Source: Lepidodermella squamata (taxonomy: Eukaryota > Animalia > Gastrotricha). From it: a stretch of 64,000 nucleotides of DNA. The stretch's first letter is position 1. Each line of letters begins with the position of its first letter. The stretch spans positions 1,984,001-2,048,000 of the forward strand of contig JBLDXI010000002.1 of assembly GCA_047495785.1 (NCBI GenBank), given 5' to 3'. Shown piece by piece: positions 10,865 through 35,776 of this stretch. The position numbers were made by a program, and so were the translations under genes. The notes beneath the pieces are model-generated. The model ran no database searches, had not been told where the DNA came from, and saw only the letters and a program-made list of their open reading frames with translations.

Positions 10865-13800
10865 ATGTATACTTGGGTGGCCAAGGCCGTGCTAGTAATA
10901 TTTGCCGGCACGATATCGGCGCTGGACGTCGGCCAAATTTTTCAGCAAGCCGTGCAGGACACGCAAATTGAAGGCGAATCTTTCCCAACGTTTTTCTCCG
11001 GCAATAATAACAACCCTCGAATTGTTCATCGGCATCATCATCACCACCATCACCAACACAAGCGGCCGAATGTAGCTGAAGTGAATGACGATAATTTCGC
11101 GAAACCAACTTGGAGCTCGATTGATTCGGTGGCTCAGCTGCCGCAATTTGACCTTATTAGTAACGAAGATGGTATAATCAATGTTGCCGATCCTCAACCA
11201 GCCGGCAATTCGATAACTATCGATAATCAGCAAAAAATGGTTATTCGTCCGAAAAATATTTTCGAACCGCTCGCAAATGTCGCTCCGACTCAGGGTTTGA
11301 TTTCATACCCAGTCATCCCGGGTTCTGATTCACCTGGTCGTATTAAGGTGGCTGAAATAATGAACTCGGGCGATCAGATTCTACAACCAATCCAGCCGAT
11401 GGATTCTATGCAGGAATTACAACCCCTCCCCCAGCAGCCGGTTAAAATAATCCCGATCGGGTCGTCGATGGATGGCACGTTAATGCCCTTCGTCGCGGGT
11501 GATTTAATCCCGCGGGTTGAGGAATTGAAGCAGAGTGACAACCAGCCAAACGTCGTGCCTACAGCGAAATCGTCTCGAAAAGCTGAGACGGTTAATTCTA
11601 GCAATAACAATCTCAACCCAACATTGCCTTTTGTCAACTTTTTCAACCCGCAACAAGCCGCTGATAATAACAGGCAATCAGCCGTGACGAAGAAACCTGT
11701 CCGAATTATTGCCATGACGACAGAGGGTAAGAAACAGCCGCAGGTTGTTGAGAAAAAACTGACGACTCATCCGTCAATGTCGGCTCCTAGTGACCATGGC
11801 ACGGTGCCTGAGTTGATCGGCAACGGCCGTAATCGACCTGAATCTCGGAAATTATACTCATGCCACGGCAAGCGATTCGTTTCGACTGAGAAAGAGGTAT
11901 AATTTTCTTCACTCAAATATTTAGATTTTCACAAAAAGTTTCAAACGTCTTTAATTGTTATCAGTTCCGTCGCAAACTCAAAGTAAGACTAGCATTTCTG
12001 CGTGAGATGTCACCTACACTTTATTTTTGAGCTTTTTTCTCTCATGAAAATTCAATTTTTTATTATTTTAAATGTTAAGTTTCGTCGCTCATTATTTTTT
12101 TGAAAAATCACAATTTTTTCCTGATTTTTTCCTGCGAACTATAGTTTAAAAATGTTTAAAGCTGAATTCATTTTAAAGTTTTTGTAGCTTTCTGTGTTTT
12201 TGGCAACTTTCAATTTCTGGAATCATCACTCAATTGTTTTTGGCAAATTCTAGGTCAAATTCGCAAAATTTAATTAGCGCTGTGTTTGTGAAGTTTTATA
12301 ATTTTATTTTATTAGCTTTAGTCATTGGTACAGTTTGTGAAAAAATGTAATTCATAATTCATTCAAAAAAGATTATTAATAATTTGAATTTTGTTGTACT
12401 TTTTTAGGCTGGAGAGGTGAAATGCTGCGGCACCAAACCGTACAAATGGCGTCGAATGCTGTGCTTGAACGGCGAACTTATCAATCCGAACAATGCCTCA
12501 GCTCCAGCCTTTGAAACGACATCAACGACCGAACAGCCGCCGCAAACCACTCAACCTTTGATCAAAATCGAAATTACTACAACATCCCGCATTCGAACAC
12601 GTGCACCTTACATCGACTACGTCGCTGCTAAGAACAATCAACAACAACACCGTCACCAGCAAATGCAAGTAATGGCCCGCCGTCGATCTCGACCATCATC
12701 TGTTGTGTCTGCGACCCTGAACGACCAAGGAATGCCCTTTATTCAGCCAGATGCGTTGCCTGGCGCGATGATTGCGGCTTTTGAGCGGCGAAATGGCGTG
12801 TTCCGGAAGCAGTCAACCGAGAGAACGGCTTCTTTAGTTACCGTGACAACTACAACAGCTTCAACCACTCCATCTACCACGACGCCTACAACTACTACAA
12901 CATCGACTACAACTACCTCGACAACGACTGCAACCAGGCCATTACCGATCGTTGAGAAAATAACAGGATTCCAACGAAGAGTAAAGCCAGACCCTGATCA
13001 GCTGCAAATCGAGCCTCAGTACAAGCCTGTTGATAACGCCTTTGATTTTTCGCAGTTATTTATGCGAAATTTCAATGGAATAATGGCAGTCAATCAGCCT
13101 CAACCTGAGGTAGTTACTTTCGATCGAAATTCAGCCGGGGAAGGCGAGGCTGCTCAAGATCTCAGCGAAGTATCGCAACCTGTGATCAAGGTAAGGGCTG
13201 ACATCCGACATTTACGGCCATCAATTCCTAATTGAGGGATGAAGGAGAATGAGAAATGTTTGGATCGAAATTGAATGTGTTTCATGAATTTTTCAAAATT
13301 GCTGAAATCATCATTCAGCCTGTTCAATTTCGAAAATAAATATAAAAAATTGAAAATTTTAATCACATAGCCCAGAATCCGGTTTTCGATTATAGGAACC
13401 TCAACATTGAGCATATTTAAGGTGGATTTTTTTATTTTATCATCTAGACCAACATGGTAATATCAAATGGGCCGATGACGTCTGAAATGGATTCTAACCC
13501 TAACAAAGTAGTCATGGTTCGATGCCGGCGCCAAGAATGGCCGATCAGCGAACCTATCGGCCTTTACATATGCTGCGGCGACAATCTGTACTACACTCTC
13601 ATGGACATTGTAATATGCAACGATGAGATGCATGCGCCTATTGTTATCGACGAGGCCGATGTCTACCGGCGGCAGCAATTGTTCGATACGGCTAATGTTG
13701 CGTTCAACGTACCAACCCCGGCGCCGTTCATGGCCGTCTCAGCGCGGAGTTCGAGTCGAAGCCGCGTCATAGAAACAATCAAGTCGTCGACTTCGAATTC

Positions 13801-18585: not shown

Positions 18586-21173
18586 TCAGCAGCAAACGTG
18601 TTGAATGACTACATTCGTGTACATACTGGCTTGCTCAAGAGAATCGAAGCAAAAATCGAATTGCTGAACACTTTCAACAAAACGTGAGAGCGAGTCAAAA
18701 ATCGACTGGTCCATGCCGGGCTGCATTGCCTTCGCTGTCATCCAGCAATCCGGAGCACTTTGGCAGTAATCGACGCAATCACAACGCGATGCCAAATTCG
18801 TCGTAACAGCGCCCGGGTTGCGAAGAACCGCGACAAACGCGAATTTGTCCACCGCCTTCACCACCCTGTTAACAGTCAGCCACATTTTGTTCTGATTGAA
18901 CTGGCCTGACTGCTCCTGTTTCCCGATTGTCTCAACAATGGCCGTCATCGGAGGGTCGCCGTCGAACATGGGCATTTTCTGGATTTTTCGGCGACTTATC
19001 ACCTTGTGATGCAGCCACTCGTGGTAAGTGTTGATACGATGCGGTACGATGTCCTTCCCTTTTCTGTCCTTCTTAGCCATGGTCATCTCGTTAACAGCCA
19101 CCCCAACCTCGACAGCCCGTTCGATAAGCATCCGGCACCACTGCCGGCTTTTCTTGTCGCTCGCCTTGAAATGCGCCGAGTAGTAGCCGCAGTTTCCCAA
19201 CAAGTGGAAATAGCCCACCAGGATTTCGCGCATCAATTCTTTGGAGAAGGCGTGGACACCTTGATCGAGGTCAGCACCTTCCAGCGTGTTGAGACACTCG
19301 AAGGTAACACGGCGTCGGTTGCTTACAATCGCAGCTTCTTCGTGTTGTTTCGCGAAAATCAACGACAATAGCAAGTCGTAGTCGCCCATGTCGAGGAAAA
19401 CTGCGATTGTGTGGTGCTTGTTCTGGTCGTAATGCCTGCCTTCCAGCGCATCTCCAAACTTTTCCAACAATTGGGGCGGGAGCTGAAAAATAAAATCGGA
19501 ATATAGGAATTGTTATAAATGTGAGCAAAGTAAACATAGATAATAGTAACTATCTATAATAAATATTATAAACAGATAGTTACTATTATCTATGAAAGTG
19601 AAGCTCAAATAGCTTGGTTTTTTTCATGCTCCCAACACTTCGTTTGCACGAGCCTGTCAATTCAAAAATGTAAGGTCTGAAAAGTATAATTTTGACCTTT
19701 TGGCGCAATAGCCTATCACTATCGAAATCTGTTTTTTCACCTAATATATTTCAAAGAATTATTCCGGAAATTTAATGTAAATTGGCAATTCATGAATTCA
19801 TGCTTCATAATGATCAAACTTCCAAAATTAAAAAATTAGATTCATCACATAAAATCCTTGGCTTTTAAAAATTCAAAGCACACGCTAAAAGAAACTTCGC
19901 GATGACTCTGTGAGCGGTCGTCTTATAGATCATCATTCCTACCAGTTCCATCGTTCCGTACCAAGAACTCGGTCAAAGACCAAAGGGGGAGACTTATGTC
20001 AATTTTCCTTATCCCAACAAGTTCGGCTCTCATAGAGCAAAGTAGGACCGCAGAACTGATAGTGATTACAAAATTCGACGTAAGGGCTCCCTTTGGTCTT
20101 TCACTGAGCTTAACGTACGGAGCGAGTTGTAGTTTTTGGGCTCTTTTATAACATCTTTATCTTTATCTTTCATTATAGTCGTCCACACCAGTGGGCGTTT
20201 TTTTCTCGAGCGTGACGCAATGATTTTTTCAATTTTGCACATATATTCAATAAATTTCTGATCAACTTGAAACATATTATTATTAATTGAAAACTGAGCT
20301 TCATTTTTATACAAACGAAAATTAATTAGCTTACCATGCAATAAGCCTCGCGGCAGTGAACACATCGGATAACGAATTTCACACGTTTCTCGCTGCGAAT
20401 TTTACCGCGAAAGTTGACGAAGCCTTCAATATGCGTCGAATGGAAGCACTTGGGCAAGTTCGCGGCCCTGAAGGCCTTCGGCGGGTCCTTCTCGTATTCA
20501 GGCGCGCTGGTGGTGGTGCTGGTGGATGGCTGTCCGAGGGGATACTGGATGCCCACTGCGTATGACAGCATATCCTGAGTGTTGACATCAGCGTTGTCTA
20601 GAATCGGAATTCCGTTGGAATCTTCGTCGAAATTCGGCGCTGGGATCGACGGATACAACGCTTCTAGGTCCGACGGCGAATCAGTGTAGTCCTGTTACAT
20701 ACAATTATACAATTACATACAATTTATAAGGTTCTGAAGGTGAAACTTACAGGGATAATTCCGGTGAGGCCGAACAAGTCATCGGGTGACTCGAGTGATT
20801 GCTGCTGGTCGACTGCAGGAGTTGGGGCTATATAACTCGGCGAGCTAGGATCAAAGAAGTCATCCGGTACTGGCTGCGGCGTGACCAGACTATCCCGGCT
20901 GATTTCAACAGCCATTGGCATCATCTTCGGCGGTGGAGGCATCAACGCATAGTCATCATCCATAGTGTTAGCTTTTCTTTTCACTGGCGAAGTTTGAACT
21001 GGGCCCGGTTGAATTTCCGGCTGATTGAACTGACCGTAATACTGCTGCAACTGGTCTGGGTATTGCTCGTACGAAGGCTGCCCATAAAACTGGTTTTGCT
21101 GATAGTATTCACTTTGCGGGTCGTAGAACCCGCCATATTGGTAACTCTCGAACGCTGGGTAAGCTAGACTCAT
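18586..21173 (-). CDS. Q/Y/P-rich N-terminus plus degenerate p300/CBP-type (KAT11) HAT domain, copy 1 (558 aa)
   Basis: Exons 21173-20751, 20691-20335 and 19482-18586 sum to 1677 nt. Colinear blocks resembling the p300 HAT: FRAANLPKC..HIEGFVN, NRRRVTFECLNT, MREILVGYFHLLGNCGYYSAHF, RQWCRMLIERAV, KMPMFDGD, FAFVAVL, FDSLEQASMYT. Confidence 0.75.
19535..19594. repeat. 60-bp hairpin or mini inverted-repeat element in the expanded intron 2 of HAT-like copy 1
   Basis: Perfect 21-bp arms catagataatagtaactatct / agatagttactattatctatg around an 18-bp spacer. Confidence 0.7.
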
Positions 21174-21639
21174 TTAAAAATCATAATATGAGCCAAGAAC
21201 ACGTGTACAAAATAATATCATACTGACGAGCAGCCAGCTCATCATTCATTTTACGCCAGCCCTGAATCATCTTGAAAGTGCTCGGGTGATGATAAAAAAA
21301 GCGCGTGATAAAGCATAAAAAACGTTATCGAATGAGTTGCGGGTTGTAAGCTGCAGGCCGCATTGTTAATCAGTAGACCTTGTTGAATTGGCAAAGATTC
21401 ACGTGTTTATTCATCCGACATTTCGGTTATTTGCCATAACCAGCTTCAATATACCAAAATAAAATTGATGGGCTGAATTGACGTGGGCAAAGATGTCGCT
21501 GGATTAATATGTCGTAAAATGTCTTGTACTGAGGAAATATCGCCACACAACAATAAGATTGATCAAATGTGGAATTTCACAATGAAAACATGTATTCGTA
21601 AGGCGGTAAAATAGAAGGTGAGTGAATACCTTCAAGGAT

Positions 21640-22125
21640 TCAATCAAGGAAAAACCATCCTCAGCATTCGTTCGAAAAATTGGAATAGCGATTGAAAACT
21701 AGGAAAATCAGGGATATTAGGAGCATGCTGCAAATTTCGTCGTCTTAGTCCTAGGAAGCCGAGTTGCTTGCACATCACATTCAAGAGTCATTCAAAATCT
21801 GGGTGGAGCTACGTTATCAAGTGGGTCACTTTGAAGCTGGTGTGATTCAAGTCAGATTAAAGCTGACAAGTTTTGGATCCCGATAGGCAGTTTTTCTACA
21901 GTTCATATCAGCCATTTATGGCGCCCATCTGAGCCAAGACTCTTTCGAACTGTTCGCGGTATTTTTCCGCGTTTCTCTCCATATTGAAACGCAATTCCTG
22001 CTGACTGCCACGCACGTCCTGTACGATAGCTTCGCCAGCTTGACGGTTGATATCGCCTGCGAAAACAGCAGCTCACCCTGCTGCTAGTTTATAGCGCTTT
22101 GAATGCGGCCCATGAAGTCTTGAAA
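21640..22125 (-). pseudogene. Decayed partial duplicate of the secreted-protein gene at 37867-38364 and its 3' flank
   Basis: tcagccatttatggcgccca..gagccaag.ctctttcgaactgttcgcggtatttttccgcgtttctctcca at about 21908 matches 37867 onward. It contains indels and lacks the 5' half. Confidence 0.8.
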
Positions 22126-22634
22126 GCTGAAGAGGTTTTAGGAGCCAATGGCGAATTAACGGGACACGCAGTCTTGAAAATGAATGCGAAACCACCTGTA
22201 AAAAATTCTGGTATAATGTGACAGAATTTGATGATGTTTTTTAGTCGCTGAATTGGACAAACGGAAGAAGACTTTAGCCTTGCTGCCGGGAAGTTAAGCA
22301 GATTCTACGCTCGTGGAAACATATGTTCGCCTTTGATCGAGGCTAAAATATAAACGCAGAAACACTTTTTTAAGATTAATTTTTATTAACATATTTTCCT
22401 ATATAAATAGCGTGCAGGATCACTTTTCCTTGCACTTTTCAGCTGCGTTTCTCTGAGTTTCCGGTAGACACAGAGGAGGAAAGAAATCTTGAATTCCCTC
22501 ATAATGCAGAAAAACTTTATAATTACAATACAAGAATAAAGGGAACGACCGTTCAAAGAGTAACAATCAAAAAGTCTCGACTAGTTTCATAAATCTTCGG
22601 AATGACAATAATCACAGCATATATAACCGGCTCC

Positions 22635-22859
22635 GGATGTTCGTACATATTTATGTACAGTTTTTCGACTATTCGTACATAATTATGTACAACTATTTGG
22701 CTATTCGCACATATTTTCGAATTGAACCCTATCCCTAACCCTTACCTGAATTACAATACAGCTTAATTACTTAATTACTTAATTACTTGAATGTATAGCT
22801 AATAGCCGCAAATATGTGCGAATAGACAAAAAACTGTACATAAATATGTACGAACATCC
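22635..22859. mobile_element. MITE-like inverted-repeat element with internal ccctaaccc motif
   Basis: ggatgttcgtacatatttatgtacagtttttt ... aaaaaactgtacataaatatgtacgaacatcc. The sequence atataaccggc is repeated on both sides. Confidence 0.7.
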
Positions 22860-23071
22860 ACTTCGTATATAACCGGCGTAATTTAAAAAAGCAGACAACT
22901 TTGACTTGATTTAGGCTTAACAACAATTCAACCAGTCTCAATCAAAACGTGTTGTTACAAATCTTCGGTATCACACGGACAATAATCACAATGTAACTGA
23001 TTATTATTTGAATTCCTAGTTATTTTAGGCTTGCTCGAAAATAAGAAAACAAGCGCCATTCGTTGCGGAAG

Positions 23072-23710
23072 TCAGCAGCGAACCTGATGGATGACTGCAC
23101 TCATGGAAAATATCGCTTGGTAAAGGTATTTGAAGCGAAACTCTTTTTCAAGAAAACGACGGCGCGAGTCGAAAATCGACGGGAATCGGTTGCCGGACTG
23201 CGTCGCCTCCGCCATCACGCTGCAATTCGGGGCAGTTTGGCAGTAATCGGCGCAATTGCAACGCGAGGCAAAATTCGTTTCAACAGCGCGAAGTACCACG
23301 ACAAACGCCGATTCGTCAACGGCCTTATGCAGCGCCTTGTTGAGAGACTTCCACATTTTATCCTTATTGAACTGGCGTGTCAGCCGCTCCTGGTTGTCAA
23401 TTATGTTAACAATGGTTGTCATCAGCTTGTCGCCGTGGAACAATGGCATTTTGTCGATTTGTCGGCGGCTTTTCACATATTCAAGCAGCCAGACGTCGAA
23501 ATTGAAGATACGCCGCGCCGCTTCTATGACCTTTCCTTTTTTATCCTTCTTAGCCATGGTCTGGCAGTCAACAGCCACCCCGGCCTTGATGGCCCGGTCG
23601 ACCAGCGAGCGGCACCACTGCTGGCTATCCTTGTCGCCCGCTTTGAAATGCACCGAGTAGTAGCCGCAGTTTCCCAACAAGTGAAAATAGCCCACCAGGA
23701 TTTCGCTCTC
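23072..23710 (-). pseudogene. 5'-truncated copy 2 of the p300/CBP HAT-like gene
   Basis: EILVGYFHLLGNCGYYSVHFKAGDKDSQQWCRSLVDRAI...KMPLFHGD is paralogous to copies 1 and 3. Homology stops abruptly near 23707 and is followed by sequence matching 37750-37805. Confidence 0.75.
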
Positions 23711-24065
23711 GTACATCCCATACATCAAGGGTGTTCAAAATCATATTCCGAGGGTGGCGCTAACTTTTTCAAGAGGATCACTTCGAAGCTGGTTCGAAGC
23801 TGGAAATTATTTATATTACACCGCCAAGGTTGCATTTAGACTCGGGAATATTCCAAAAAGAAAGAAAACAATGTTGCGACCTCGGGTCATTTTTATTCCG
23901 TTGGACGCTCAGCGACCTTTCGGGCGCCACGTACCCGTCATCAGGATAAAAACTGTCCTAAACCCTAAACCATGGTAAAATCTTTTTATTACAACAAAGG
24001 TTAAGTTATTAGAAATAAGAAATAAGTAATATGTAGCAATAGGTATATAGTTAGAGGAAAACTGT

Positions 24066-24266
24066 TTTCATCCGACCAATGTCTTATTTAATCTGACAAC
24101 CAAAAATGTGACTAAAACCTGCCGACTTGCTTTTTCATATATTTCATATAACTTGGATCGCCATAAATCTTTCAAAATAAAAATCGAGAAAATCGATATT
24201 TTCATGTCGGATGATTTAAGTCACATTTTTGGTTGTCAGATTAAATAAGTCATTGGTCGGATGAAA
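24066..24266. mobile_element. MITE-like inverted-repeat element
   Basis: ttttcatccgaccaatgtcttatttaatctgacaaccaaaaatgtgact ... agtcacatttttggttgtcagattaaataagtcattggtcggatgaaaa (about 50-65 bp arms). Confidence 0.75.
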
Positions 24267-24779
24267 AAAGTCACACCCTATATGAGCTGCCGATGGACAG
24301 TAACAATGAAGTAACAATATCATAAAATACAGATTTAGGCAGATTCCAATTTTAAAGCCAAATACCTATCACTGCATGGGCATAAATGGTAGAAGCATCA
24401 GTATATATTATGCAAGAATCATCAATGAAAGAAAACTTCAAACGGTCTCAATCGAAGCGTGTCTCGACCAGTTTCATAAAGCTTCGGTATCACCCTGACA
24501 ATAATCATCTAAATGGCTTCACCGGCATAACTATTTAGAAAGCAAACAAATTCCGAGTTAATTTAGGTGATTGATGCGTTAATTAATTAGTTAGGTAATT
24601 ATGCAAAAATCAATGAAAAGTCTCAATCAAAGTCTCAGTCAAAACTTATCGACCAGCTTCATAAATTTTCGGTATCAGCCGGGCAATAATCACAACGTAA
24701 CCGGCTTAATTATTTAAAACGCAAACAAATTTCGAGTTATTTTAGGCTTGCTCGACACAAGCGCAATTCGTTGTGGGAA

Positions 24780-27700
24780 TCAGCAGCAAACGTGTTGAAT
24801 GACCTCGTTCGTGCTCATTTTCGCTAGCTCAAGCTGATCGAAGCGAAAAACGAACTGCTGAGAGATTGCAGAAAAACGCGAGCACGAGTCGAAAATCGAC
24901 TGTTCCCTGCCGGGCTGCGTCGCCTTCGCCATCATGCCGCAATCCGGGGCGATTTGGCAGTAATCGACGCAATCACAACGCGACGCCAAATTCGTCGTAA
25001 CAGCGGCCGGGTTGCGAAGAACCGCGACAAACGCGAAATCATCCACCTTCTGCAACTTCGTGTTAACAGCCAGCCACATTTTGTTCTCATCGAACTGGCC
25101 TGACTTCTCCTGTTTTACAATTTTCTCAACAATGGCCGTCATCAGTTTGTCGCCGTCGAACATGGGCATTTTAGCAATGTTTCGGCGACTTATCACCTTC
25201 TCGTGCAGCCAGTCGTGGAAATTGTAGATACGATGCGGTACGATGTCCCTTCCTTTTCTGTCCTTCTTAGTCATGGTCATCTCGTTAACAGCCGCCCCAA
25301 CCTCGATAGCCCGGTCGATCAGCATTCGGCACCACTGCCGGCTTTCCTTGTCACCCGCCTTGAAATGCGCCGAGTAGTAGCCGCAGTTTCCCAACAAGTG
25401 GAAATAGCCCACCAGGATTTCGCGCATCAATTCGTCGGCGAAGGTGTGGACGCCTTGTTCGAGGTCAGCCGCTTGCAGCGTGTTGTGGCACTCGAAGGTA
25501 ACACGGCGTCGGTTGCTTACAATCGCAGCTTCTTCGTGTTGTTTCGCGAAAATCAACGACAATAGCAAATCGTAGTCGCCCATGGCGAGGAAAACTGCGA
25601 TTGTGTGGTGCTTATTTTGGTCGCGACGCCTGCCTTCCAGCGCATCTCCAAACTTTTCCAACAATTGGGGCGGAAGCTGAAAAATAAAATCCGAATTCAG
25701 GTATGGTTAAAATTGTTGGGAACACAGTTAACTTACCGTGCTGTCAGCCTCGCGGCAATGAAGACATCGGATGACGAATTTCGCCGGTATTCCCCCGCGA
25801 ATCTGACCGCGATTATTGACAAAGCCTTCAATATGCGTCGAATGGAAACACTTAGGCAACTTGGCGGCTCTGAACTTTAGCAAGTCCTTCTCGTATTCAG
25901 GCGCGCTGGTGGTGGTGCTGGTGGATGGCTGTCCCAGGGGATCCTGGATGCCCACTGCCAATGACAGCATATCCTGAGTGTTGACATCAGCGTTGTCTAG
26001 AATCGGAATTCCGTTGGAATCTTCGTCGAAATTCGGCGCTAGAATCGACGGATCTAGTCCGTCAAGGTCGGGCGGCGAATCAGTGTAGTCCTGTTACATG
26101 ACATGCTGTCATCAATGTCATCAGTGCCCATATTGCGGGCCGAAAATCCCCTGCGACTGTCACGTTTATTTTAAATTGTTTATTAAATAATTTATATTAA
26201 ATAATAATATTGTTAATCGGAATAATATAAAAATTATAACGACGTAGTTAATAGCAACGGGCAAGCTGTTTCTTTCGCGGGTTATCACCTCCATCTGTTG
26301 CAAGAGCAAGATGGTTCAACTCTCACGTCTCGTATTGCTGACATTGCATGTGCATTCTTTTACCATCTTTCCACTGTTTTAACCAATGATAGTCGCAATG
26401 ATACTTTCATTAAGAAGAATCTCATTTGTTTTAGCCTGTTAATAACATGTCTACTTGGGGCCATTCTTCGGCAGGCTTGCTGAAGCAGCTATCTACGCCT
26501 TCAACCTCAGCTACTGATGGTAGCAGCACACCTCGCATTGTTTCTGGTTAGGCTTTTTTCAGATTATTTTATAGTGGTATCAACTCAACTTACTGTGTTT
26601 CATGCTAGTTCTCAATGGTGCTTCGCCACAACCAAGATCGCCTATGCTAGCGGGTTCGCCCTTGCTTACTTCTGCTTTCGGTAATCGCTCTGGTATGACT
26701 TTTAAACTGAGTGCTTTGCTTCTTACTAGCATTTCTCACATGTGATTTATTACCAGTTCCTATTAAGAAAGCGATTCCTTCCGTTCATGCCACGCCAAAG
26801 GCTAGCTCTAGAAATTGTTAGCTTCTTATTAATTGCTTTTGATTCCATTGACTTACTTTATAATCTAGTGACCTCTGAAAACCGAGCACCTCCTGCCGTT
26901 GCTACCCCAGCGAAGGTGGCGGTGAAACGGCCACTAGAAGATGACGCTGCGAAAGCAATTCATAGTCTCAGTAAGTATTAGCATTTTTGGAAGTAATGTC
27001 TAATTGCAGCTGTTGTTTGATAGAAACTCAACTCACTGCTGAAAAGCGGAAGTATGAGATTGCTCGGGCGCAAGTGCTACGCCTTAAGAAATTTGCTCCG
27101 AATGGGCGGCATGTTGGCCATTTGACTGCCGAGAAAGCTCAACTTCCTTTGGCTCAGTTGTCTCGGCAGAAGAGGTCTCTGAGGCATCGGAGTGAATTGA
27201 TTCGACCAATTCAGTCGATCTTCGATGATGTACAAAGCCGCGGCGATTTCTATCCTGTGAAATCATTGTCTGTCCAGGTTTGACTAAAATTAAATCATTG
27301 CCAGATTGAAGAGAATTAATGTGTCTCATGTGTTCCTTCTAGGTCAATTTCGATGGTGGAATACCAGCGAGGAAGTTATGGTTTGGCGATGCCGATGCTA
27401 AAGCTAATACCCTGCGCGAGTAAGTTGCTGATATTTTTTAAATGCTATTATTATATTCTTTTCCCTGTCAACTTCAGTGTGATGCGCGATTATTCCTCTC
27501 GCTACCTCTCGGTTAAAGATGCCTTGCGCCAATGCAATACCTCCTGGTGCCAGATTACTCAGCGAGAGTTCTTGGCTGAAAAGAAGAAGCTTGGCTCTAT
27601 CCTGCCGATTAGCGTGGTGGTTCCGCCAGAAAGGGATGTAACCGATGAGGTCGAAGGTTTTAGCAATGCTGCGTTCATCCTGCCCAGCAAGCAGATGCCT

Positions 27701-30700
27701 TATCTCTTCCGAAACGGAATTGTTCCTCGACCTAACACCAACACAGTAGTCTGCCGAGTACAAGGTATTATTCATAATTTCAATAGTTGCCGACTTTTCA
27801 TTGGCTATATAATCTTTGATGAGCCCTTTAAGCTTTCTTAAATGTCTCTCATCTTGAATATGTCGGTTTTTCTAGGTGATGGTACCGTCTTTCGAACTGG
27901 GAAAGATCCTCATTATCGAATGAATTTCGCCTTTCATCATCAGAAGACGCGTGTTACTACAAAAACCGAATATCTGGCTGCTGTTTTGATGGGCAAGGAG
28001 ACTCGTCACAACTTGGAGCTCCTCTCGCCTGTCTTCGCTGATTTCAACGCCATAAAAGTGAACGGTGTTCTTCTTGATGATGGCACTAAGTTAACCGTTA
28101 AATTGTAAGCAAAAATTTTGGCTTTTATGGCAATATTTATCTGAGAATTTTGCGGACAGGTCTCTATGCGCCGACCTGCCTGCCATCTGCAAAATCGTTG
28201 GCACGAGCTATACCGATGCTCTAGCCTGTCCGTTCTGCACCTTCAATTTCGTTGATGATGCCAAGCCTCTGGATGTCCTCATCACAGAGCTGGACCGGAA
28301 ACCAAAGCGACCCTTGCCTGATTCGCTACTCGATGTCGACAGCGATGACATCTATCTATGCACGCTGCATGCTGCTCTGAGAATCGCGTTTCTTTTTTTA
28401 CGAGCCGTGAGTAGAAAATGAAGTCCTTTCAGCTTATTTACCTCACATTTACCTAATTTTTTAGTTATTCCTCTTCATGAAAAAAGAAATCGAAGATTAT
28501 GAATCGAAAATTGTCTGCCTTTTGCGATCGTTCGATAAAAAGGCTGAAATCGCGTTCGTGAAAGAGGACATCGCCGTGCACCACATGAATCACCACACTC
28601 TTTTCAAGGTGGTTTTCGACTCGGAGGAGTCTTGGTGTCCTCTTCAACTGTGCCGGGGAGGCTGGGAGGCTAAATATCTTCTTGCTTCGTTCGGCCGCGC
28701 CAAGAAGCCTCTCATCAATTTCTTAGTCTCGAAAAATGTTATATTCGACAAGAAGTCCAGCCCGGCGGACTTGGCTCAGCTCTGCGTCGATGCTGGCATG
28801 CTAAATTCGCTGGAACCTAGTTCCATGCAAACGAAGTTGGTGCAATTTGGCGAGGCAAAAGCTCTCTTCAAGCAGCTTTTCGCTGTCATTCGCTGTGGCG
28901 ACGGCTCCAAGCCAATCCCCGAGACACCCGCCGATTTCCATGACTTTGCCAACATTCTTCGACGACTAAGTGGATGCTATACTCCTTACCTCCACATCTT
29001 CCAGTTCCATTCGCACGATCGTCTGGCGAGGCTGAGGCAGGAGGGCACTTATCTGTCGGCTATATCGGGCGATAACGTCGAGCTCTCGAACAAGGTCGGC
29101 AAAAACCAGTTGTCGAACCAGGTATGCCGCGTCAACAACGACGAAAGTCAGCAGCTGATGAGGCTCTACAACATCCAGCTGGCTACTCTGGCGACTCGAG
29201 TCGAGGACGACGTAGCCGAAGGCAGGGCAGCGGTGATCTTCACTGCAGACGATTCTGTGGAACCGTTTGATTTCACCTGCGATGGTGATATGTGATATAT
29301 TTGTTTCTGTCATTGTTATATATTTAATATAGCCGTCTTAATATTTCATCTTTTTCCTGATTATTTTCTTTCATCTGCGATGGCGCTGTAATTGTTATTA
29401 TGATTCGCCAATTATATTGATATCAAATCTTGGGATATTATACGTGTGTTTCCACGACTGTATGATAATTATTTGTGGTCTTAACTAGTCCCACTAAACG
29501 ATGCTAATCGATGCTGGGCAATAAATTTATGTAAAGCCGCCTTAATGATTTGCTCTCTCTGAGGATACGTCTTGCAAATCACGTTAATTGTGCTTTCATA
29601 TAATATTTATACTGTATATTACTTCGCCGCTTTTCAAGAAAGATGGTCAATCATTCTGTCCCTAAATAAGTTAGCAATATTACTTTGATTTCTTTGATTT
29701 TATTTATGACATTCTCAGCCGCCAGCCGCCTTAATGATTTGGGGTCTAACCCGTCCTACCTATATGTCGATAATTTATGGCCGTATATAGGCACCTTGAT
29801 ATTTTTTAATAATTCCTATGCCCTTCTATGAGCTCGTCTTTGATAACCAATTCTTGTGCTCGAGCAGAAAATTGCGCGTTTTATTATGTTATAACCACCA
29901 TATTCTCGCATCGACTGGTTTCATTGATAAATGCTTTCCGATTTCCTACGAATTAGCATTTTAGCTCGGCTATCGTAAAGCAACCTCGTTTTTTGTGAAA
30001 TTATTCGACACGTTAAAATTGATATTAATAATTTTATGAGCTCTATATCATTGAATCCTCCGATCAAAACTCAGCTCTTTCTCAGCCTTTCTGTTAATAT
30101 AATTCCTGCCTAGAATCCAATTGCTGCTTTTGTTTGATGTTTCGAGGTCAAAATCATCAGGCACCGCTATTAACTACTTCCCAATTTATTCCAAAAAGGG
30201 AACAAATAAAAGCAGGCCAATCATGCGTTTTTATTTCGTATTTTACGAATATTAATCCGAAAGTACAATATTGCGATGAAGCAACGATTGCGATGAAGAG
30301 CATTATTAAACATGAAGCATCGAGAAAATCAGAAAATCAGAAAATCAAAAGTATCACTTCTTAAAAAGTCGCTTAGGTTTCGGCGCTGGTTGTATTTTGC
30401 CCATGTTCGAGCAAAACAGACGAAACAAAATACGGCGTTCCTGCTTGGCAGCACCGCTGTTGCGATTGTGATCGGGGTCAAGGCGGTATCGATTGCTCAT
30501 AAGCACGCGAGGCTCGAGATCGTAATAGGCCGCCACCTCCTCGTCGGTTGTAGGTGTTTTCGGGTGGATGCGATGATCGGGATGCTGAAATATAAAATAA
30601 CAGAGCCAATTAAAAAATTTAGAGTGAATTTAGAGTGAAATTACCTCTTCAACCTTTTTGCATGGCGACTTTTGGCGATCAGCTACAACGCGGGGCTGTC

Positions 30701-33700
30701 GCCGTTGCTTGGGGGTACTGGGAGGCGCCTTCAGTTTTCGCTCCATTATGTCAACTTTACGACGGGGACGCTTATTAGACACCGAAGACATAACGTCGAT
30801 ATAGATATGTAAATAAAATGAGGAGATTCTAAAATAAATAAAAAACAGATTTCAGACTCGAACTGAATTGAGACGAATAATAGCCTTGCAAATGGCCTGA
30901 GGCGAGTTTTCAATTATGGGTTTTTTCATAGAGAAAGATACATTATTAACAAGGCTGGTTCTAGTGTTTCTTTTCAGAGCGAAAAGCGAGACGACAATAT
31001 CGAAACGACGGAATATCTCTGCAAGATGTTCGGCCGAAATGCGAATGTAGCGCTTTTTCTCGCTACAAAATTCACAAATTTTAATCGTAATCGCGCATTA
31101 GTCACCGTTTACCCACCTTTTAAAAATTTCCTGCTGAGCCAACTTACCTGCGGGAAAAACGCAATGACGGGCTACGACCTTGAGCTGATTCAGCATTGGC
31201 TTAGCTGCATCGCGGTTGAGCTGGGTTTCGAGTGCTAAAACCACTTGATTGGCCAGGAATAGCATCTCTTTTCGGCGATCAAAAACAGCGAAAGGATCGA
31301 ACAGCTGGAGTTCAAGGACGCGAACGAGCCGCACTTGTTGCTGTTTCTTTAAGTAATCGTCGACGCGCCGAAATTCAGTCACGGCAGAGCCATAAATCAC
31401 AGGCTTCTTCAAAGTTGCGCGCTCCCGCAAACAATAGGCCATAATTAAGGTGGATAATCAACAACAACTAAGGATGAAAAAGATACTTATAAAAATATTT
31501 ATTAAGGCGTCTAATTAACGCAATAGATAAATCGGAACAGGAGTCGAAGCGAGCGCAACAACGAATTTATAAAAAAATTGGGCGCGCAACTTAGGTAATT
31601 TGGTTGATAAAATGAGCGCATTTAGCGAGCGGATAGGAAATATCAAGCGTTTTGGCGCATGGGCCTACAAATACGCGCAAGCGCAATTCAATTAAACGAG
31701 ATCTGAGGCGCGGAAAGCGAGAGAATTAATAATACTGCTTGGACCGCGCACGTATAGCAGTAACTCTTCGCGAAGCGATGTATTAATCTACAATCGAAAA
31801 ACGAGGGCAATGATTTCGACAATGAGTCGAAGCTGATTGGCGTATAATTTTAATATATTATTGCTACTACAAAACAGCCGGCGCCTAACAGGTGTAAATG
31901 GCGGCGATGATTCCGCTGCTATGATAGCGGTGATTATAGATCAAACACCTAGTCAACCTTTTGATTCGGCTAAATAACACCGCTGTTTGATAAGTAAACA
32001 GGCGCGTTACAATCCATCCCTAGCGCGCACGCAAACACAAGTAGATGCACGCACGAACACGAACAGGTGCGCTCGGGCCTCGAAACCAAAATTCGACCAC
32101 GGAAAACCACGGAAAGGTGTGAAAAAAGTAAGAACAATGCAGCTGGTTGACGCTGACAATAAGGCGTGAATTGAAATGAATAGAAGATGTGTGTGGCTAT
32201 ACAATAGCTATTCTACAGATCGCGCACAACAGCACTCGCTCACGCCGTAGCTGTTCCAGGTGTCAATCGATGATAAAATCATGTGTTGCTATTCTCGTCC
32301 CGAAATTGAATTGAAAAAAACGAAGTACACGTGAAAATAGGAAAATTATTCTTTCAATCGCAATTTTGAAAAAATGCCAAGAACGCCTGAGCAATTGCTT
32401 GAACACAAAATTAGAATGCGAGTGTATCGCGCTAACCGCTCTGCTGAGAAAATAGCCGCGGATCAAGAACGCGATAGACTGCGAAAAGCGGCATTAACTG
32501 CCGCTACTGTAGAATCTGCGGAAAAGCGAGCGGCGGCAACAAAGCGAGGTTTGTTATAAAAATTACGTGTTTCAAATTATATTTTCTTTTTATCATTTTC
32601 AGCATTGGGTGATCAACCCGTTGTGACGTATATCGACGAAGATGACATTATTGACTGGGAGCAGCGGCCGGCTGTAAATTATAGCACTTGGGACCCGTTA
32701 CCTCGATTTCAACTAGCTGGATGTACAATTTCTCTAAAACCTTGTGATAACGCTGTCAGGCCAAAAAACACTCGTGAAATGAATAAAATAAACAATAATT
32801 GAGATAGATTGGTGCTTTTTCCTTCTGGTTGTAGACGTGTAATATAGAACAAAAATCAAACGAAAATACCATCGTATATTTATTTTGCAGCTAGGGTGAA
32901 ACTGGCGAGTCTTGAACAATTTAACAAAATTACAACACATCCACATTTTTCGTGAGGGCAAGTTTCAACATTACTCGCATTTGAAATCAAAATCACACAT
33001 GAAGAGAGGCGCACATAATCAATTCAGAACCTTCAATATTGACAAGGATTTTTTCATTTTTCACAGCTAATAATAAGCCGAAGAACGCTTTCGAAACGTT
33101 TTTACGATCTAAATTATTCACGACGTCATTGAAGCTGAGATTATTCGAGGCAACAAGGGAAGATAATTGATTATAGAAAAAGCGATCGCTATCATCGTCA
33201 AGTCGTAATAAACTGTGAAAAATGTGCGAGCCAGCCGGAAACAAAGATTCATCATACGGTTGTACGCTAACAGACTCAATCTCAGTTTGTACCTCGGTGG
33301 CCTCAACAGCATCGGCCGTGGCTGAATTTTCACCATTATCGGGAAGACTCGGCATGAATGACGGTATAGATCTTTTCGCAACGGGAGCGAACCTTTGTAA
33401 AATTGAAGCAGCCGGTCGTTTCCGAGAATTTAGTTCGGAAATAGGTACAGTTGATGTCGGCGGTTCATGAGGCAAATCGATAGGAGCAGCTCCGACTTGA
33501 ATAACTGGAACTGGCACCAGAGTCGCAGGAATGTTGTCAGATACAACGCAGCCTGAAAAAATTAAGTAGGATTAAATAAGTCACTAAATAAATTAATTTA
33601 ATTTACCCTGAGGCCAGCTTTGATCAGTTGTGAGATAACTAACAGGCTGAGGAGCTGAACTGGGAGGTAACGGATTCCGAAAACCTGAATAACGAATAAT

Positions 33701-35776
33701 AAAATTATGAATATAAAACAGCGACTGGTTCAACTTACTAGGAATGAACAGAACGTTCTCGTCTTTTCCAGTGCTGGCCGGGCGGATGACTACTGCAGTA
33801 ATAAATACAATCACGAAAAAAATTGGTGAATAAAACAATTACCAGGCTCGTCGAACTTGGGTATATCCTCCGCCTTGGTTAAGAAAATCGGCAAATCTAC
33901 AATAATTGAAAGGTGGTAGTTATACACGAAATCTATTCATCACTTGTTACCTAAGGCACCAAAAAGCGTCTTCTGAAGACGATTGCAGACCTTGATGCTG
34001 GGTTGTCTGATAAGTTGAAGGGCGGGGACAAGGCGGTCTGACAGAAGACTGCCAACACGTTCGGTTCCTTTTGACCTCGTCGTGTGAAATTCCGTGTAGA
34101 ATGGGTCAAGTTCAATCTCCTTCTCAAAGAAGGTGAGGGTTGTTGATGGCTGGAGAGGCTTCGACTCGAAGGCAGTTCGCTCATCCCATGCGAGGACTTC
34201 GTGAATAGTAAGCAGAGGTTCAGTCTTGAGTTTCATCTCTGCAAGAAGTTGGTTAAAAGGAAAAGCAGGAATAGCTGCAGCCTCGAAGATGGTCAAACCA
34301 AAGCCGTCATCAATAATCGGTTCTGCATCAATAGGGGCGATCGGATTTTCAGCCACGGAAGTCATGTCAGGGGTCAACCGAGGTAGCATTTCAAGCGGCT
34401 AAATAATTACCAAAGAATTAGGTGAACAATTCATAACTGCGAGCTTACCATATGCGAGGCAATAGCGTCAGAAATATCCGCACAACCAAGCTGAACAAGA
34501 GCGGTCGCCAGATAGGTGTTCGTATCGGGACGCTCCGCTCTCCGTCTAGACATATCTACTTGTAAAATGCACGAAGCATCATTAGCATCGTGAAACAGCC
34601 TGTCAATTTTCAGGCTGTAAGTGACACTAAGAGAATAAATTAACTGGCCTGAGGTTCGCAAGTCAAGATTTGGCAACGATTCGGCGCATTCACAGAGGGC
34701 CTTGATGTCGACATTGGCGATCAGGGAAGGCTCGATCGGCTGCTTAGCAATGGACTTGCGAAACACACGCCCGCGTAGGAACAATTCGAGTGAACTCATC
34801 ATCGCAATAAGTTAATATCTATGGGTAGAAGCAATACATGCGAAGGTAATGAGAACCAGCAAACTACAGCGTATGATCGATGTTGGCAGGCTTTAGCTAG
34901 GGCTTGATCGGAGAAGGGAGAAATAGGTCATCGATGATCGCTGTCCTATACTCATCCTGAAGCATTCGACAGCCGCTATTTGTCAACCAACCCTGTTTTT
35001 AAATGGAATGATCAAGACAGACTCGAACAAGAATGCACATGCACCCTCAGCAATAGTAGACGGCAGACGTGAGAGTTAAACCCTCTTGGAACAGCTGGAG
35101 ACGATAAACCGCGAAAGGACCAGCAACCCCGCAGCCCCGCAGCCCCGTTGCTATCAACGTCGCTAATTAATTTTTTTTATATTATTCCGATTAACAATAT
35201 TATTATTTAATATAAAATATTTAATAAACAATTCAAAATAAACGTGACAGTCGCAGGGGATTTTCGGCCCGCAATATGGGCACTGATGACATTGATGACA
35301 GCATGGAAATTGCAATTTTAATCTCAAACAGATTCAACGATGGTGAAACTAACAGGGATAATTCCGGTGACGCCGAGCAAGTCATCGGGTGACTCGAGTG
35401 ATTGCTGCTGGTCGACTGCAGGAGTTGGGGCTATATAACTCGGCGAGGTGGGATCGAAGAAGTCTTCTGGCACTGGCTGCGGCGTGACCAGACTATCCCG
35501 GCTGAATTCAACAGTTATCGGCATCATCTTTGGAGGTGGAGGCATCAACGCGTAGTCGTCATCCATCTCGTAAGCTTGTCTTGTCATTGGCGAAAATTGA
35601 ACTTGACCCGGTTGAATTTCTGGCTGGTTGTACTGGCCGTACGGCTGCAGCTGGTACGGATATTGCGCATACGAAGGCTGCCCATAAAACTGGCCTTGCG
35701 GGTTGTAGTACTCACTTCGTGGGTCATAGAACCCGTCACATTGATAACTTTCGAGCTCGGGGTGAGCTCTACTCAT
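24780..35776 (-). CDS. p300/CBP HAT-like gene copy 3 (557 aa); intron 1 interrupted by the 9.2-kb transposon
   Basis: Exons 35776-35354, 26090-25737 and 25676-24780 sum to 1674 nt, and each is a clear paralog of the matching copy 1 exon. Intron 1 is 59 bp in copy 1 and about 9.26 kb here. Confidence 0.8.
26102..26360 (+). repeat. Left terminal inverted repeat (core about 26102-26232)
   Basis: Inverted match to about 35030-35305. Confidence 0.9.
26447..29295 (+). CDS. DDE transposase of the RAG1/Transib/Chapaev-related group (10 exons, 756 aa)
   Basis: Exons 26447-26546, 26609-26692, 26757-26816, 26869-26970, 27024-27277, 27343-27419, 27478-27764, 27876-28104, 28160-28406 and 28465-29295 total 2271 nt in an open frame. 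Motifs VCRVQGDG (D1), LMGKETRHNL, LCADL (D2), CPFC, CTLH, YTPYLHIFQFH and SGDNVELSNK (E). Confidence 0.82.
30354..30791 (-). CDS. Transposon cargo: small basic protein (125 aa, 2 exons)
   Basis: Exons 30791-30645 and 30584-30354 in frame: MSSVSNKRPRRKVD...STPKQRR...KSPCKK...PKPKRLFKK. Confidence 0.55.
30852..31442 (-). CDS. Transposon cargo: uncharacterised protein (178 aa, 2 exons)
   Basis: Exons 31442-31117 and 31062-30852 join in frame over a 54-bp GT-AG intron. Starts MAYCLRERATLKKPVIYG. Confidence 0.5.
32374..32802 (+). CDS. Transposon cargo: small charged helical protein (124 aa, 2 exons)
   Basis: Exons 32374-32548 and 32603-32802 in frame: MPRTPEQLLEHKIRMRVYRANRSAEKIAADQERDRLRKAA... 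Confidence 0.55.
32993..34802 (-). CDS. Transposon cargo: Rad21/Rec8-like alpha-kleisin, cohesin subunit (6 exons, 515 aa)
   Basis: Exons 34802-34449, 34398-33951, 33896-33843, 33792-33739, 33684-33607 and 33552-32993 total 1548 nt in an open frame. N-terminal LDLRTSGQLIYSLSVTYSLKIDRLFHDANDA resembles Rad21 [31 protein letters not shown]. C-terminal LSFNDVVNNLDRKNVSKAFFGLLLAVK resembles the kleisin winged-helix NRKQAAAKFYSFLVLKK. Confidence 0.82.
35030..35305 (-). repeat. Right terminal inverted repeat (core about 35172-35305)
   Basis: ...cgtgacagtcgcaggggattttcggcccgcaatatgggcactgatgacattgatgacagcatg. Confidence 0.9.

What the first reader, a model, noticed from the sequence alone, without database searches (positions are those of the whole stretch)
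18586..25970. Tandem family of stand-alone, apparently dead p300/CBP HAT domains
Seen: three paralogs align colinearly with the p300 HAT domain from FSAKRLP to STMCMLVELH but have no bromo, PHD, KIX, TAZ or ZZ domains. Relative to p300 (from memory): YLDS (D1399) becomes CLNT/CHNT; HIWA (W1436) becomes HFKA; the substrate-binding L1 loop (CPPSEGDDYIFHCHP...) is deleted; QEWY (catalytic Y1467) becomes RQWC; and the Lys-rich autoinhibitory loop is absent. A new Cys cluster (CDCVDYCQ..PDC) is conserved in all copies, and the N-terminus is a Q/Y/P-rich low-complexity region with acidic DDFF/DDLF motifs. Inference: an amplified pseudo-acetyltransferase acting as a scaffold, decoy or activator, with open frames maintained despite divergence.
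Basis: partly seen in the sequence, partly recalled or inferred. Interest (0 to 1): 0.78.

Follow-up and report, generated by a model that had tools for sequence, protein, structure and literature searches.

The report
Disabled p300/CBP-like acetyltransferase gene family
Two complete genes and one gene fragment here belong to a family of at least 13 genes in this small invertebrate that encode only the catalytic-domain fold of the gene-activating enzyme p300/CBP, without the parts that hold acetyl-CoA and do the chemistry, so they are probably non-catalytic "dead enzymes" whose job is still unknown.

Summary
On the minus strand lie two complete three-exon genes and one 3' fragment. Gene 1 is 21173-18586. 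Gene 3 is 35776-24780, with a 9.2-kb transposon in its first intron. Gene 2 is the fragment, 23704-23075.

Pfam does not recognise these proteins, but three other tests tie them to the p300/CBP acetyltransferase (KAT11) domain:
- A family profile hits only p300/CBP in the PDB (E 6e-6).
- Profile-profile comparison with CBP domains gives 99.5% probability.
- Predicted structures match p300 (Z 16 for gene 1 exon 3; Z 25.6 for an intronless relative).

All 13 family members compared lack Asp1399, Arg1410, Trp1436 and Tyr1467. All have a 21-residue deletion of the acetyl-CoA-covering L1 loop, and no autoinhibitory loop. No bromo, PHD, ZZ or TAZ domain was found in the window's copies.

Gene 1 is transcribed and spliced exactly as modelled. 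dN/dS is 0.3-0.6, which indicates relaxed purifying selection. The fragment shows no sign of expression.

Outside this genome only one relative turned up among 1.8 billion proteins.

Best reading: a lineage-specific, expressed pseudo-acetyltransferase family. What it actually does was not tested.

The scan has already reported the same family on neighbouring DNA (s1-410303).

The parts
20751..21173 (-). Gene 1 exon 1 (141 codons): Q/Y/P-rich low-complexity N-terminus with acidic-aromatic motifs (DDDYALM, DDFFDP, DDLFGL). The transcript 5' end lies near 21224.
   Evidence: ORF and splice sites. An RNA-like contig of run X1 covers 20919-21224 and ends in a cDNA-adaptor-like tail. Loose ends at 20691 and 20750 each carry the letters of the neighbouring exon.
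20335..20691 (-). Gene 1 exon 2 (119 codons). Its last ~45 codons (from about 20472) are the start of the KAT11-like domain (FRAANLPKCFHSTHIEGFV...FVIRCVH).
   Evidence: blastp to the genome's own CBP aligns this stretch with ELPQNRLSKHIEDRV. In the relative P0001 the aligned stretch maps to p300 residues from 1287.
19483..20334 (-). Gene 1 intron 2, 852 nt (60 nt in gene 3). It holds about 790 nt of extra DNA and a 60-nt palindrome at 19535-19594.
   Evidence: Joint 19482|20335 with GT..AG ends on the minus strand in RNA-like run X1, and zero X1 depth inside. blastn of the gene 1 locus against the gene 3 locus.
18586..19482 (-). Gene 1 exon 3 (298 codons plus stop): the main body of the KAT11-like domain, with N at Asp1399, S at Arg1410, K at Trp1436, the L1 loop deleted, C at Tyr1467, and the Cys cluster RCDCVDYCQSAPDC.
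23075..23704 (-). Gene 2: a truncated copy holding only the C-terminal 210 codons of the domain (open frame 23072-23728). It is 56% identical to gene 1 and probably a pseudogene fragment.
   Evidence: tblastn and blastn find nothing of exons 1-2 or the first 85 codons of exon 3 upstream. dN/dS is 0.66-0.86. X1 depth is 0 over 23100-23499.
24780..25676 (-). Gene 3 exon 3 (298 codons plus stop), 81% identical in protein to gene 1 exon 3.
25737..26090 (-). Gene 3 exon 2 (118 codons), followed by a 60-nt intron 2 (25677-25736).
   Evidence: Splice sites read; open frames checked.
26091..35353 (-). Gene 3 intron 1. It is a 59-nt intron (as in gene 1) interrupted by the 9.2-kb transposon at 26102-35305, which sits 11 nt before the acceptor site.
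Evidence: The flanks add up to 48+11 nt and align to gene 1's 59-nt intron. Terminal inverted repeats and a 2-bp TC duplication are present.
35354..35776 (-). Gene 3 exon 1 (141 codons), 80% identical in protein to gene 1 exon 1.

Best explanation
These are members of a lineage-specific family of at least 13 loci in this genome, with one relative known elsewhere. The family descends from the p300/CBP (KAT11) acetyltransferase domain and no longer works as a p300-type acetyltransferase. Each complete gene in the window (genes 1 and 3) encodes a disordered Q/Y/P-rich N-terminus with acidic-aromatic motifs, followed by a complete KAT11 fold.

That fold lacks the loop that encloses acetyl-CoA (L1), the arginine that holds the CoA phosphates (Arg1410), the tryptophan that guides the substrate lysine (Trp1436), the catalytic tyrosine (Tyr1467) and Asp1399. 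It also has no reader or zinc-finger domains and no autoinhibitory loop.

Shown here: the homology, the fold, the residue losses, expression and splicing of gene 1, and purifying selection.

Inferred, not shown: the domain survives as a binding module, and the disordered acidic N-terminus gives it a transcription-related adaptor or competitor role alongside the genome's single canonical CBP. Gene 2 is a dead fragment. Gene 3 is intact in its exons but carries a young transposon in intron 1.
For: Homology:
- The family profile (A1, 12 paralogs) hits only p300/CBP among 177,635 PDB sequences, E 5.7e-6.
- hhalign of A1 against 12 CBP/p300 HAT domains gives probability 99.5%, E 1e-22, over 246 colinear columns.
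- A profile search of 1.84 billion proteins returns, apart from one family member and one bacterial repeat protein taken for a false hit, CBP/p300-type proteins: seven carry Pfam HAT_KAT11 and all thirteen match the genome's own CBP HAT domain in phmmer; list.

Fold:
- The AF2 model of gene 1 exon 3 matches p300 with Foldseek E 1.9e-9 and Z 16.1 at 2.5 A over 193 residues. Rtt109 scores Z 8.2 or less.
- The intronless relative P0001 matches p300 residues 1287-1650 with Z 25.6 at 2.8 A over 280 residues.

Loss of function sites:
- In all 13 members, Asp1399 is N/K/S/Y or a gap, Arg1410 is A/S/M, Trp1436 is K/R/T/D, and Tyr1467 is C (N or a gap in P0001). Residues 1439-1459 are deleted.
- The p300 acetyl-CoA contact list is taken from PMC8155611. 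D1399Y is cited as an enzymatically dead variant in PMC9843983.

Other points:
- No other Pfam domain is present.
- Expression: the run X1 contigs lack both introns of gene 1, with the joint exactly at 19482|20335.
- Constraint: dN/dS is 0.29-0.63 among genes 1, 3 and the next paralog, and the bootstrap rarely reaches 1.
- The family is monophyletic against CBP with 100/100 support.
Against: - No biochemical test was possible. Rtt109 shows that a KAT11 fold can be active with other catalytic residues.
- Four invariant Cys/His residues include a Cys exactly at the Tyr1467 position and the retained His1434. This could mean a new active site or a metal site rather than a dead pocket.
- dN/dS of 0.4-0.6 is only moderate constraint.
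- The binding or adaptor role has no direct support: the TAZ2 test gave no verdict.
- Of the p300 substrate-pocket residues (T1357, E1505, D1625, D1628; PMC9843983) only the D1625 position is conserved.
- Expression of gene 3 was not tested.
- The window's own full domain could not be folded as one chain.
Confidence: 0.62

Rival explanations
1. The fold has been re-tooled rather than killed. The invariant cysteine at the catalytic-tyrosine position, together with the retained His1434-equivalent, forms a new Cys-His catalytic pair (thioester-type acyl transfer or hydrolysis) or a redox or metal-sensing site, so the proteins are enzymes or sensors of a new kind.
For: Only 14 of about 290 columns are invariant across 12 paralogs that are 29-81% identical to gene 1. 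Four of these are C98, H104, C116 and C234. C116 aligns to Tyr1467 and H104 to His1434.
Against: The relative P0001 has no Cys at that position. The CoA-enclosing loop and Arg1410 are gone in all members, so the usual acyl donor has no obvious pocket.
Confidence: 0.12
2. The proteins are decoys in a genetic conflict. They are fast-duplicating stand-alone copies of the CBP catalytic domain that soak up factors, for example viral or transposon proteins, that would otherwise target the single real CBP.
For: The genes lie in tandem clusters on at least two contigs, with turnover (a fragment, a transposon hit) and moderately high dN/dS of 0.4-0.65. Published work calls catalytically dead CREBBP mutants 'zombie enzymes' that inhibit EP300; this is known here only from the Key Points shown in the paper listing (PMC12333230).
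Against: No sites under positive selection were tested. No interacting partner is known. The surfaces that partners of p300 usually bind (TAZ, KIX, bromodomain) are absent.
Confidence: 0.12
3. The copies are decaying pseudogenes, and their open frames are chance survivals.
For: Gene 2 is a truncated fragment with dN/dS of 0.66-0.86 and no RNA contigs over 23100-23499. Gene 3 has a 9.2-kb transposon 11 nt from a splice acceptor.
Against: Genes 1 and 3 keep 558- and 557-codon frames with canonical splice sites. dN/dS is below 1 in all three exons. Gene 1 is transcribed and correctly spliced. Paralogs only 29-34% identical to gene 1, and a relative in another organism about 30% identical to the paralogs, still keep the fold.
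Confidence: 0.05

Closest known systems
p300/CBP histone acetyltransferase (KAT11) catalytic domain, e.g. PDB 3BIY, 4PZR, 4PZS
   Same: The fold is the same over the whole domain, p300 residues 1287-1650 (Z 25.6 for P0001; Z 16 for gene 1 exon 3). The sequence is colinear, with shared motifs (SNRRRV, EILxGY, GY..AH, W at position 1466, FxGD, FVxxL, F..F....A..ST).
   Different: There are no bromodomain, RING/PHD, ZZ or TAZ domains and no autoinhibitory loop. The L1 loop has a 21-residue deletion. Asp1399, Arg1410, Trp1436 and Tyr1467 are all replaced. Identity is 14-19%. Pfam HAT_KAT11 does not score these proteins.
Fungal Rtt109 (the other structurally known KAT11-fold enzyme)
   Same: It is a stand-alone KAT11-fold protein without the p300 flanking domains, and it is active with catalytic residues that differ from those of p300.
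   Different: It is a much weaker structural match (Z 7-11 against 14-26 for p300/CBP). By sequence profile this family groups with p300/CBP, not with Rtt109.
Other degenerate KAT11 genes of the same genome: the tandem pair just beyond the window (scan note s1-410303) and C2H2 zinc-finger + KAT11 genes on contig C20 (scan note s1-365906)
   Same: The pair at C2:2057078 and C2:2059752 belongs to the same family (72% and 39% identity to gene 1 exon 3). The C20 genes are also divergent KAT11 derivatives (PF08214 scores of 26-30 bits).
   Different: The C20 genes are a separate lineage. The family profile matches them only over 31 C-terminal columns with probability 18%. They also carry zinc fingers.
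Truncated CBP paralogs and short HAT_KAT11-only proteins of nematodes
   Same: Nematodes carry 7-12 CBP/p300-family genes (PMC11075575). The ESM Atlas clusters nearest by language-model features are proteins of 263-374 aa, most of whose members carry a HAT_KAT11 hit and no other listed Pfam family, mostly from nematodes.
   Different: C. elegans CBP-3 is described as keeping only a zinc finger and lacking the HAT domain (bioRxiv 10.64898/2026.08.14.744963), which is the opposite arrangement. Most members of the nematode clusters still score with Pfam HAT_KAT11, unlike this family. This genome has no nematode SL1 sequence.
Catalytically dead CREBBP 'zombie enzyme' mutants in lymphoma
   Same: They show that a KAT11 domain without activity can still act, by inhibiting the active paralog EP300 (PMC12333230 Key Points, seen in the listing).
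   Different: Those are somatic point mutants of the full-length multidomain protein. They are not evolved, stand-alone, loop-deleted genes.

Membership tests
p300/CBP-type KAT11 acetyltransferase domain | KAT11 three-dimensional fold over the whole domain | tested here: met
   Gene 1 exon 3 model: Foldseek E 1.9e-9, top 50 hits all p300/CBP; Z 16.1 at 2.5 A over 193 residues. Relative P0001: Z 25.6 at 2.8 A over 280 residues, matching p300 1287-1650.
p300/CBP-type KAT11 acetyltransferase domain | Sequence homology detectable by profile methods | tested here: met
   hmmsearch of A1 against the PDB finds only p300/CBP, E 5.7e-6. hhalign gives probability 99.5%, E 1e-22.
p300/CBP-type KAT11 acetyltransferase domain | Score above the Pfam HAT_KAT11 (PF08214) gathering threshold | tested here: not met
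   No hit at E<=1 for any exon product. No hit for the full-length relative P0001. The six-frame genome scan with PF08214 found only the canonical CBP and the two C20 genes.
p300/CBP-type KAT11 acetyltransferase domain | Catalytic Tyr1467 and lysine-guiding Trp1436 | tested here: not met
   Tyr1467 is Cys in all 12 paralogs (N or a gap in P0001). Trp1436 is K/R/T/D.
p300/CBP-type KAT11 acetyltransferase domain | L1 substrate-binding loop that encloses acetyl-CoA (residues ~1436-1459) and the phosphate-binding Arg1410 | tested here: not met
   A 21-residue gap stands at the place of residues 1439-1459 in every member. Arg1410 is A/S/M. The contact list comes from PMC8155611.
p300/CBP-type KAT11 acetyltransferase domain | Asp1399 (the D1399Y mutant is enzymatically dead) | tested here: not met
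   N in genes 1 and 3 and in three other paralogs (the C2:2057078, C48 and one C32 copy); K/S/Y or a gap in the rest. D1399Y is cited in PMC9843983.
p300/CBP coactivator (full-length architecture) | Bromodomain, RING/PHD, ZZ, TAZ and KIX domains and a lysine-rich autoinhibitory loop around the HAT domain | tested here: not met
   Pfam finds none of these in any exon product. The loop region is a gap in hhalign. The genome's canonical CBP at C2:2729201 does have the expected architecture: a bromodomain-type sequence, Cys-rich PHD-like region and ZZ/TAZ-type Cys motifs read by eye in its translation, not scanned against Pfam.
Pseudoenzyme (non-catalytic homolog of an enzyme, kept by selection) | Homologous to active enzymes, catalytic and cofactor residues lost, gene expressed, under purifying selection | tested here: met
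   losses; spliced RNA of gene 1; dN/dS 0.29-0.63.
Pseudoenzyme (non-catalytic homolog of an enzyme, kept by selection) | Measured absence of activity and of cofactor binding | not testable with these tools
   This needs recombinant protein, acetyl-CoA binding measurements and HAT assays.

The most novel reading that the evidence does not exclude
The KAT11 scaffold has been rebuilt around a new centre. An invariant cysteine at the place of the catalytic Tyr1467, the retained His1434-equivalent and two further invariant cysteines (C98, C234) would form either a Cys-His catalytic pair with a new acyl-transfer or hydrolase chemistry, or a zinc or redox switch sitting in the former acetyl-CoA pocket. 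That would be a p300-fold protein with a function not known for this fold.
Probability: 0.1. Interest if true: 0.8.

Novelty: new variant of a known kind. Interest (0 to 1): 0.5.

Why it matters
p300/CBP is among the most studied transcription coactivators. In the papers I searched I found no description of a natural, stand-alone, expanded family of its catalytic domain that has lost the cofactor loop and the catalytic residues.

If these proteins act without catalysis, they are a natural experiment on what the KAT11 fold can do besides acetylation, for example partner binding, or competition with the real CBP as reported for 'zombie' CREBBP mutants.

The family is also invisible to Pfam, so it shows how such derivatives are missed by routine annotation.

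The practical weight is limited. The family is so far seen in one small invertebrate genome and in one metagenomic relative, and no function has been demonstrated.

Tried and rejected
- Pfam scan of the six exon products: no HAT_KAT11 hit.
- phmmer of exon 3 alone against the PDB: only a chance hit.
- Word-based protein search with exon 3 (candidates of 164-521 aa): nothing. This says nothing about longer relatives.
The A1 pattern matched 19 stretches, and none was a relative.
- Complex prediction, genome's own CBP TAZ2 (L001:2809-3108) against the acidic part of gene 1 exon 1: score 0.01, no verdict, not evidence either way.
- Nematode SL1 pattern in the genome: absent, so a nematode origin is unlikely.
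- hhalign of the family against the C20 zinc-finger KAT11 gene: only 31 columns at probability 18%, so I treat it as a separate lineage.
- Search for the missing 5' part of gene 2 with sensitive tblastn: nothing found.
- Literature searches for a described dead or stand-alone KAT11 family: none found. C. elegans CBP-3 turned out to be the opposite kind of truncation.
- The organism was not identified.
- The joined (spliced) 558-aa model of gene 1 was used only inside local scripts, for blast against the window and loci. It was not sent to any search or folding tool. Exons were searched one by one by reference, and the full-domain fold was taken from the intronless relative P0001.

Full report
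**What is in the window**

The window is G000:C2:1984001-2048000 of a 121-Mb eukaryotic genome with short introns. On the minus strand, ORF listing and local tblastn define three related units.

- Gene 1 has three exons (21173-20751, 20691-20335, 19482-18586) with GT..AG introns of 59 and 852 nt. It encodes 558 residues.
- Gene 3 has the same structure (35776-35354, 26090-25737, 25676-24780) and encodes 557 residues.
  - Its second intron is 60 nt.
  - Its first intron is the same 59-nt intron as in gene 1, split 48+11 nt by the 9.2-kb transposon at 26102-35305. The transposon has terminal inverted repeats and a 2-bp TC duplication (the element was described in scan note s1-431961).
- Gene 2 (23704-23075) is only the last 210 codons of the domain. 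Nothing of the upstream part could be found. A high-copy repeat lies just upstream of it (depth of DNA run X2 at 23900-24300).

**Is it related to p300/CBP?**

Routine tools say no:
- Pfam finds no HAT_KAT11 in any exon product.
- The six-frame PF08214 scan of the genome finds only the canonical CBP at C2:2729201 (215 bits) and two weak genes on contig C20.
- phmmer of exon 3 against the PDB gives nothing real.

- blastp of the gene 1 model against the genome's own CBP domain gives a colinear alignment at 19% identity, pairwise E 3e-5.
- A search of the genome with exon 3 finds 14 matching stretches, which correspond to at least 13 loci. Five are on C2 (three of them in the window), one on C48, one on C60, and six or seven in a cluster on C32.
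- A profile of 12 paralogs (A1) hits 14 PDB sequences, all p300 or CBP, best E 5.7e-6.
- hhalign of A1 against an alignment of 12 CBP/p300 HAT domains (A2) gives probability 99.5%, E 1e-22, over 246 colinear columns.
- AlphaFold2 on exon 3 with A1 gives pLDDT 64. Foldseek returns only p300/CBP in the top 50, E 1.9e-9. VIA-align gives Z 16.1 at 2.5 A over 193 residues, and Rtt109 scores 8.2 or less.
- The profile search of 1.84 billion representative proteins found 15 hits. One is a true family member (P0001, 386 aa, E 1e-38) and one is a bacterial repeat protein taken for a false hit. The other 13 all match the genome's own CBP HAT domain in phmmer; the seven of them scanned against Pfam carry HAT_KAT11.
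- P0001 is an intronless gene on animal contigs from metagenomes, beside ion-channel genes. It is about 30% identical to every paralog here.
- Folded with the family alignment A3, the core of P0001 has pLDDT near 90. It superposes on p300 residues 1287-1650 with Z 25.6 at 2.8 A over 280 residues. The ESM Atlas structure search also returns HAT_KAT11 clusters.

So the fold and the homology are established, and the domain is complete.

**Is it dead?**

I used the hhalign register and the p300 numbering of the shared motifs. The acetyl-CoA contacts listed in PMC8155611 fare as follows in all 13 members:
- Residues 1439-1459, most of the L1 loop including Pro1439, Pro1440, Tyr1446, Lys1456, Ile1457 and Pro1458, are a 21-residue gap.
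- Arg1410 is Ala, Ser or Met.
- Asp1399 is Asn, Lys, Ser, Tyr or a gap.
- Trp1436 is Lys, Arg, Thr or Asp.
- Tyr1467 is Cys in all 12 paralogs of this genome.
- Tyr1397, Tyr1414, Arg1462 and Leu1463 are replaced or variable.
- Leu1398 is kept in only six members.
- Ala1437 (10 of 13) and Trp1466 (8 of 13) are mostly kept, and His1434 is kept in all.

The autoinhibitory loop is absent. D1399Y alone is cited as an enzymatically dead variant (PMC9843983). Of the substrate pocket residues named in that paper (T1357, E1505, D1625, D1628), only the D1625 position is conserved, in the family's IFDS motif.

Loss of p300-type acetyl-CoA binding and catalysis is therefore well supported by inference, but it was not measured.

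**Is it a living gene family?**

*Expression.* Run X1 behaves as RNA. It has depth on the exons of gene 1, none in intron 2 and almost none in the intergenic DNA downstream to gene 2. Its evidence for gene 1 is:
- A joint lies exactly at 19482|20335, with GT..AG ends on the minus strand.
- Loose ends at 20691 and 20750 carry the letters of the neighbouring exon.
- A contig ends at 21224 in an adaptor-like tail.

Gene 2 has no X1 depth over 23100-23499.

*Selection.* Nei-Gojobori dN/dS among gene 1, gene 3 and the next paralog is 0.29-0.63 in each of the three exons. The bootstrap rarely reaches 1. Other pairs give 0.4-0.65 and the gene 2 fragment 0.66-0.86.

*Phylogeny.* A maximum-likelihood tree puts the family as one clade against CBP (100/100). 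It has a clade of the window copies with C2:2057078, C48 and C60, and a second clade holding the C32 cluster. The place of P0001 is unsure.

**Other features**

- N-terminal regions. The N-termini of genes 1 and 3 and of several paralogs are disordered and rich in Q, Y and P, with acidic-aromatic motifs (DDFFDP, DDLFGL; SDFxICD in the C32 copies). P0001 also starts with an acidic-hydrophobic stretch. These look like activation-domain motifs, which is an inference from composition only.
- Cys cluster. The CxCx3-4Cx5C cluster is present in the window clade, in C2:2059752 and in P0001, but deleted in the C32 clade. Its region is modelled with low confidence.
- Invariant residues. Across the 12 paralogs only 14 columns are invariant. 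They include C98, H104, C116 and C234. This keeps open a metal site or a new Cys-His centre.

**How it most likely works**

Shown: a complete KAT11 fold without the cofactor loop and without the catalytic residues; stand-alone architecture; expression; moderate purifying selection; tandem expansion.

Inferred: the protein does not acetylate. The fold is kept as a binding surface, and the disordered acidic N-terminus connects it to the transcription machinery, as an adaptor or as a competitor of the single canonical CBP. The only direct test I could run, CBP TAZ2 against the acidic part of exon 1, gave no verdict.

**Comparison with what is known**

- The closest relatives are the p300/CBP catalytic domains. 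Rtt109 is more distant.
- Nematodes have several CBP-family genes (PMC11075575). The Atlas clusters nearest by features are short HAT_KAT11-only proteins.
- C. elegans CBP-3 keeps a zinc finger and not the HAT domain.
- This genome lacks the nematode SL1 sequence.
- I found no paper describing a dead stand-alone KAT11 family.
- The scan itself has already reported the same family on the two genes just beyond this window (s1-410303) and a separate zinc-finger KAT11 family on C20 (s1-365906). I confirmed that the first belongs to this family. The second is a distinct lineage.

**Limits**

- The spliced 558-aa model was used only in local scripts and was not sent to search or fold tools. Exons were searched apart.
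- The full-domain structure rests on the relative P0001.
- The organism was not identified.

**Verdict**

This is a real, expressed, lineage-specific pseudo-acetyltransferase family derived from p300/CBP. It is a new variant of a known kind, of moderate interest.

Noticed in passing
window 26091-35353: The 9.2-kb transposon (26102-35305) sits inside the 59-nt first intron of gene 3, 11 nt before the splice acceptor. It has 26-nt terminal inverted repeats starting CATGCTG and a 2-bp TC duplication. All exons of gene 3 are still intact, so the insertion looks young.
   Followed up: partly
window 19483-20334: Intron 2 of gene 1 is 852 nt against 60 nt in gene 3. The extra ~790 nt include a 60-nt palindrome at 19535-19594, which may be a small inserted element. 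DNA run X2 shows a 17-nt deletion at 20193 and several SNPs there.
   Followed up: no
window 23900-24300: The DNA run X2 reaches depths of 2,000-11,000 here against about 60 elsewhere. This is a high-copy repeat lying just upstream of the truncated gene 2, and it may be what removed that gene's 5' part.
   Followed up: no
window 19040-19070, 25234-25264, 23540-23575 (exon 3 of the three copies): A lysine-rich insertion of 9-10 residues (KKDRKGKD-like) is present only in the three window copies, at a different place from the p300 autoinhibitory loop. It could be a nuclear-localisation-like patch.
   Followed up: no
window genes 1 and 3: Synonymous divergence between genes 1 and 3 is 0.18 in exon 3 but 0.32-0.36 in exons 1 and 2. 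This would fit gene conversion over the 3' exon.
   Followed up: no
L002, L003 (G000:C20:2882851-2889174): Two neighbouring genes score weakly with Pfam HAT_KAT11 (26-30 bits), carry a C2H2-type zinc-finger motif upstream, and have Leu at the Tyr1467 position. They are a second, separate degenerate KAT11 family in the same genome (also scan note s1-365906).
   Followed up: partly
L016/L017 (G000:C32:1137771-1138435): One member of the C32 cluster matches in two pieces in different frames. It is probably a frameshifted pseudogene or has an extra intron.
   Followed up: no
L018 (metagenome contig with P0001): The relative P0001 and its neighbours (a 427-aa potassium channel and a 471-aa Cys-loop receptor) are called as uninterrupted ORFs, so its host animal seems very intron-poor. 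The channel is 61-64% identical to its counterpart in this genome.
   Followed up: partly
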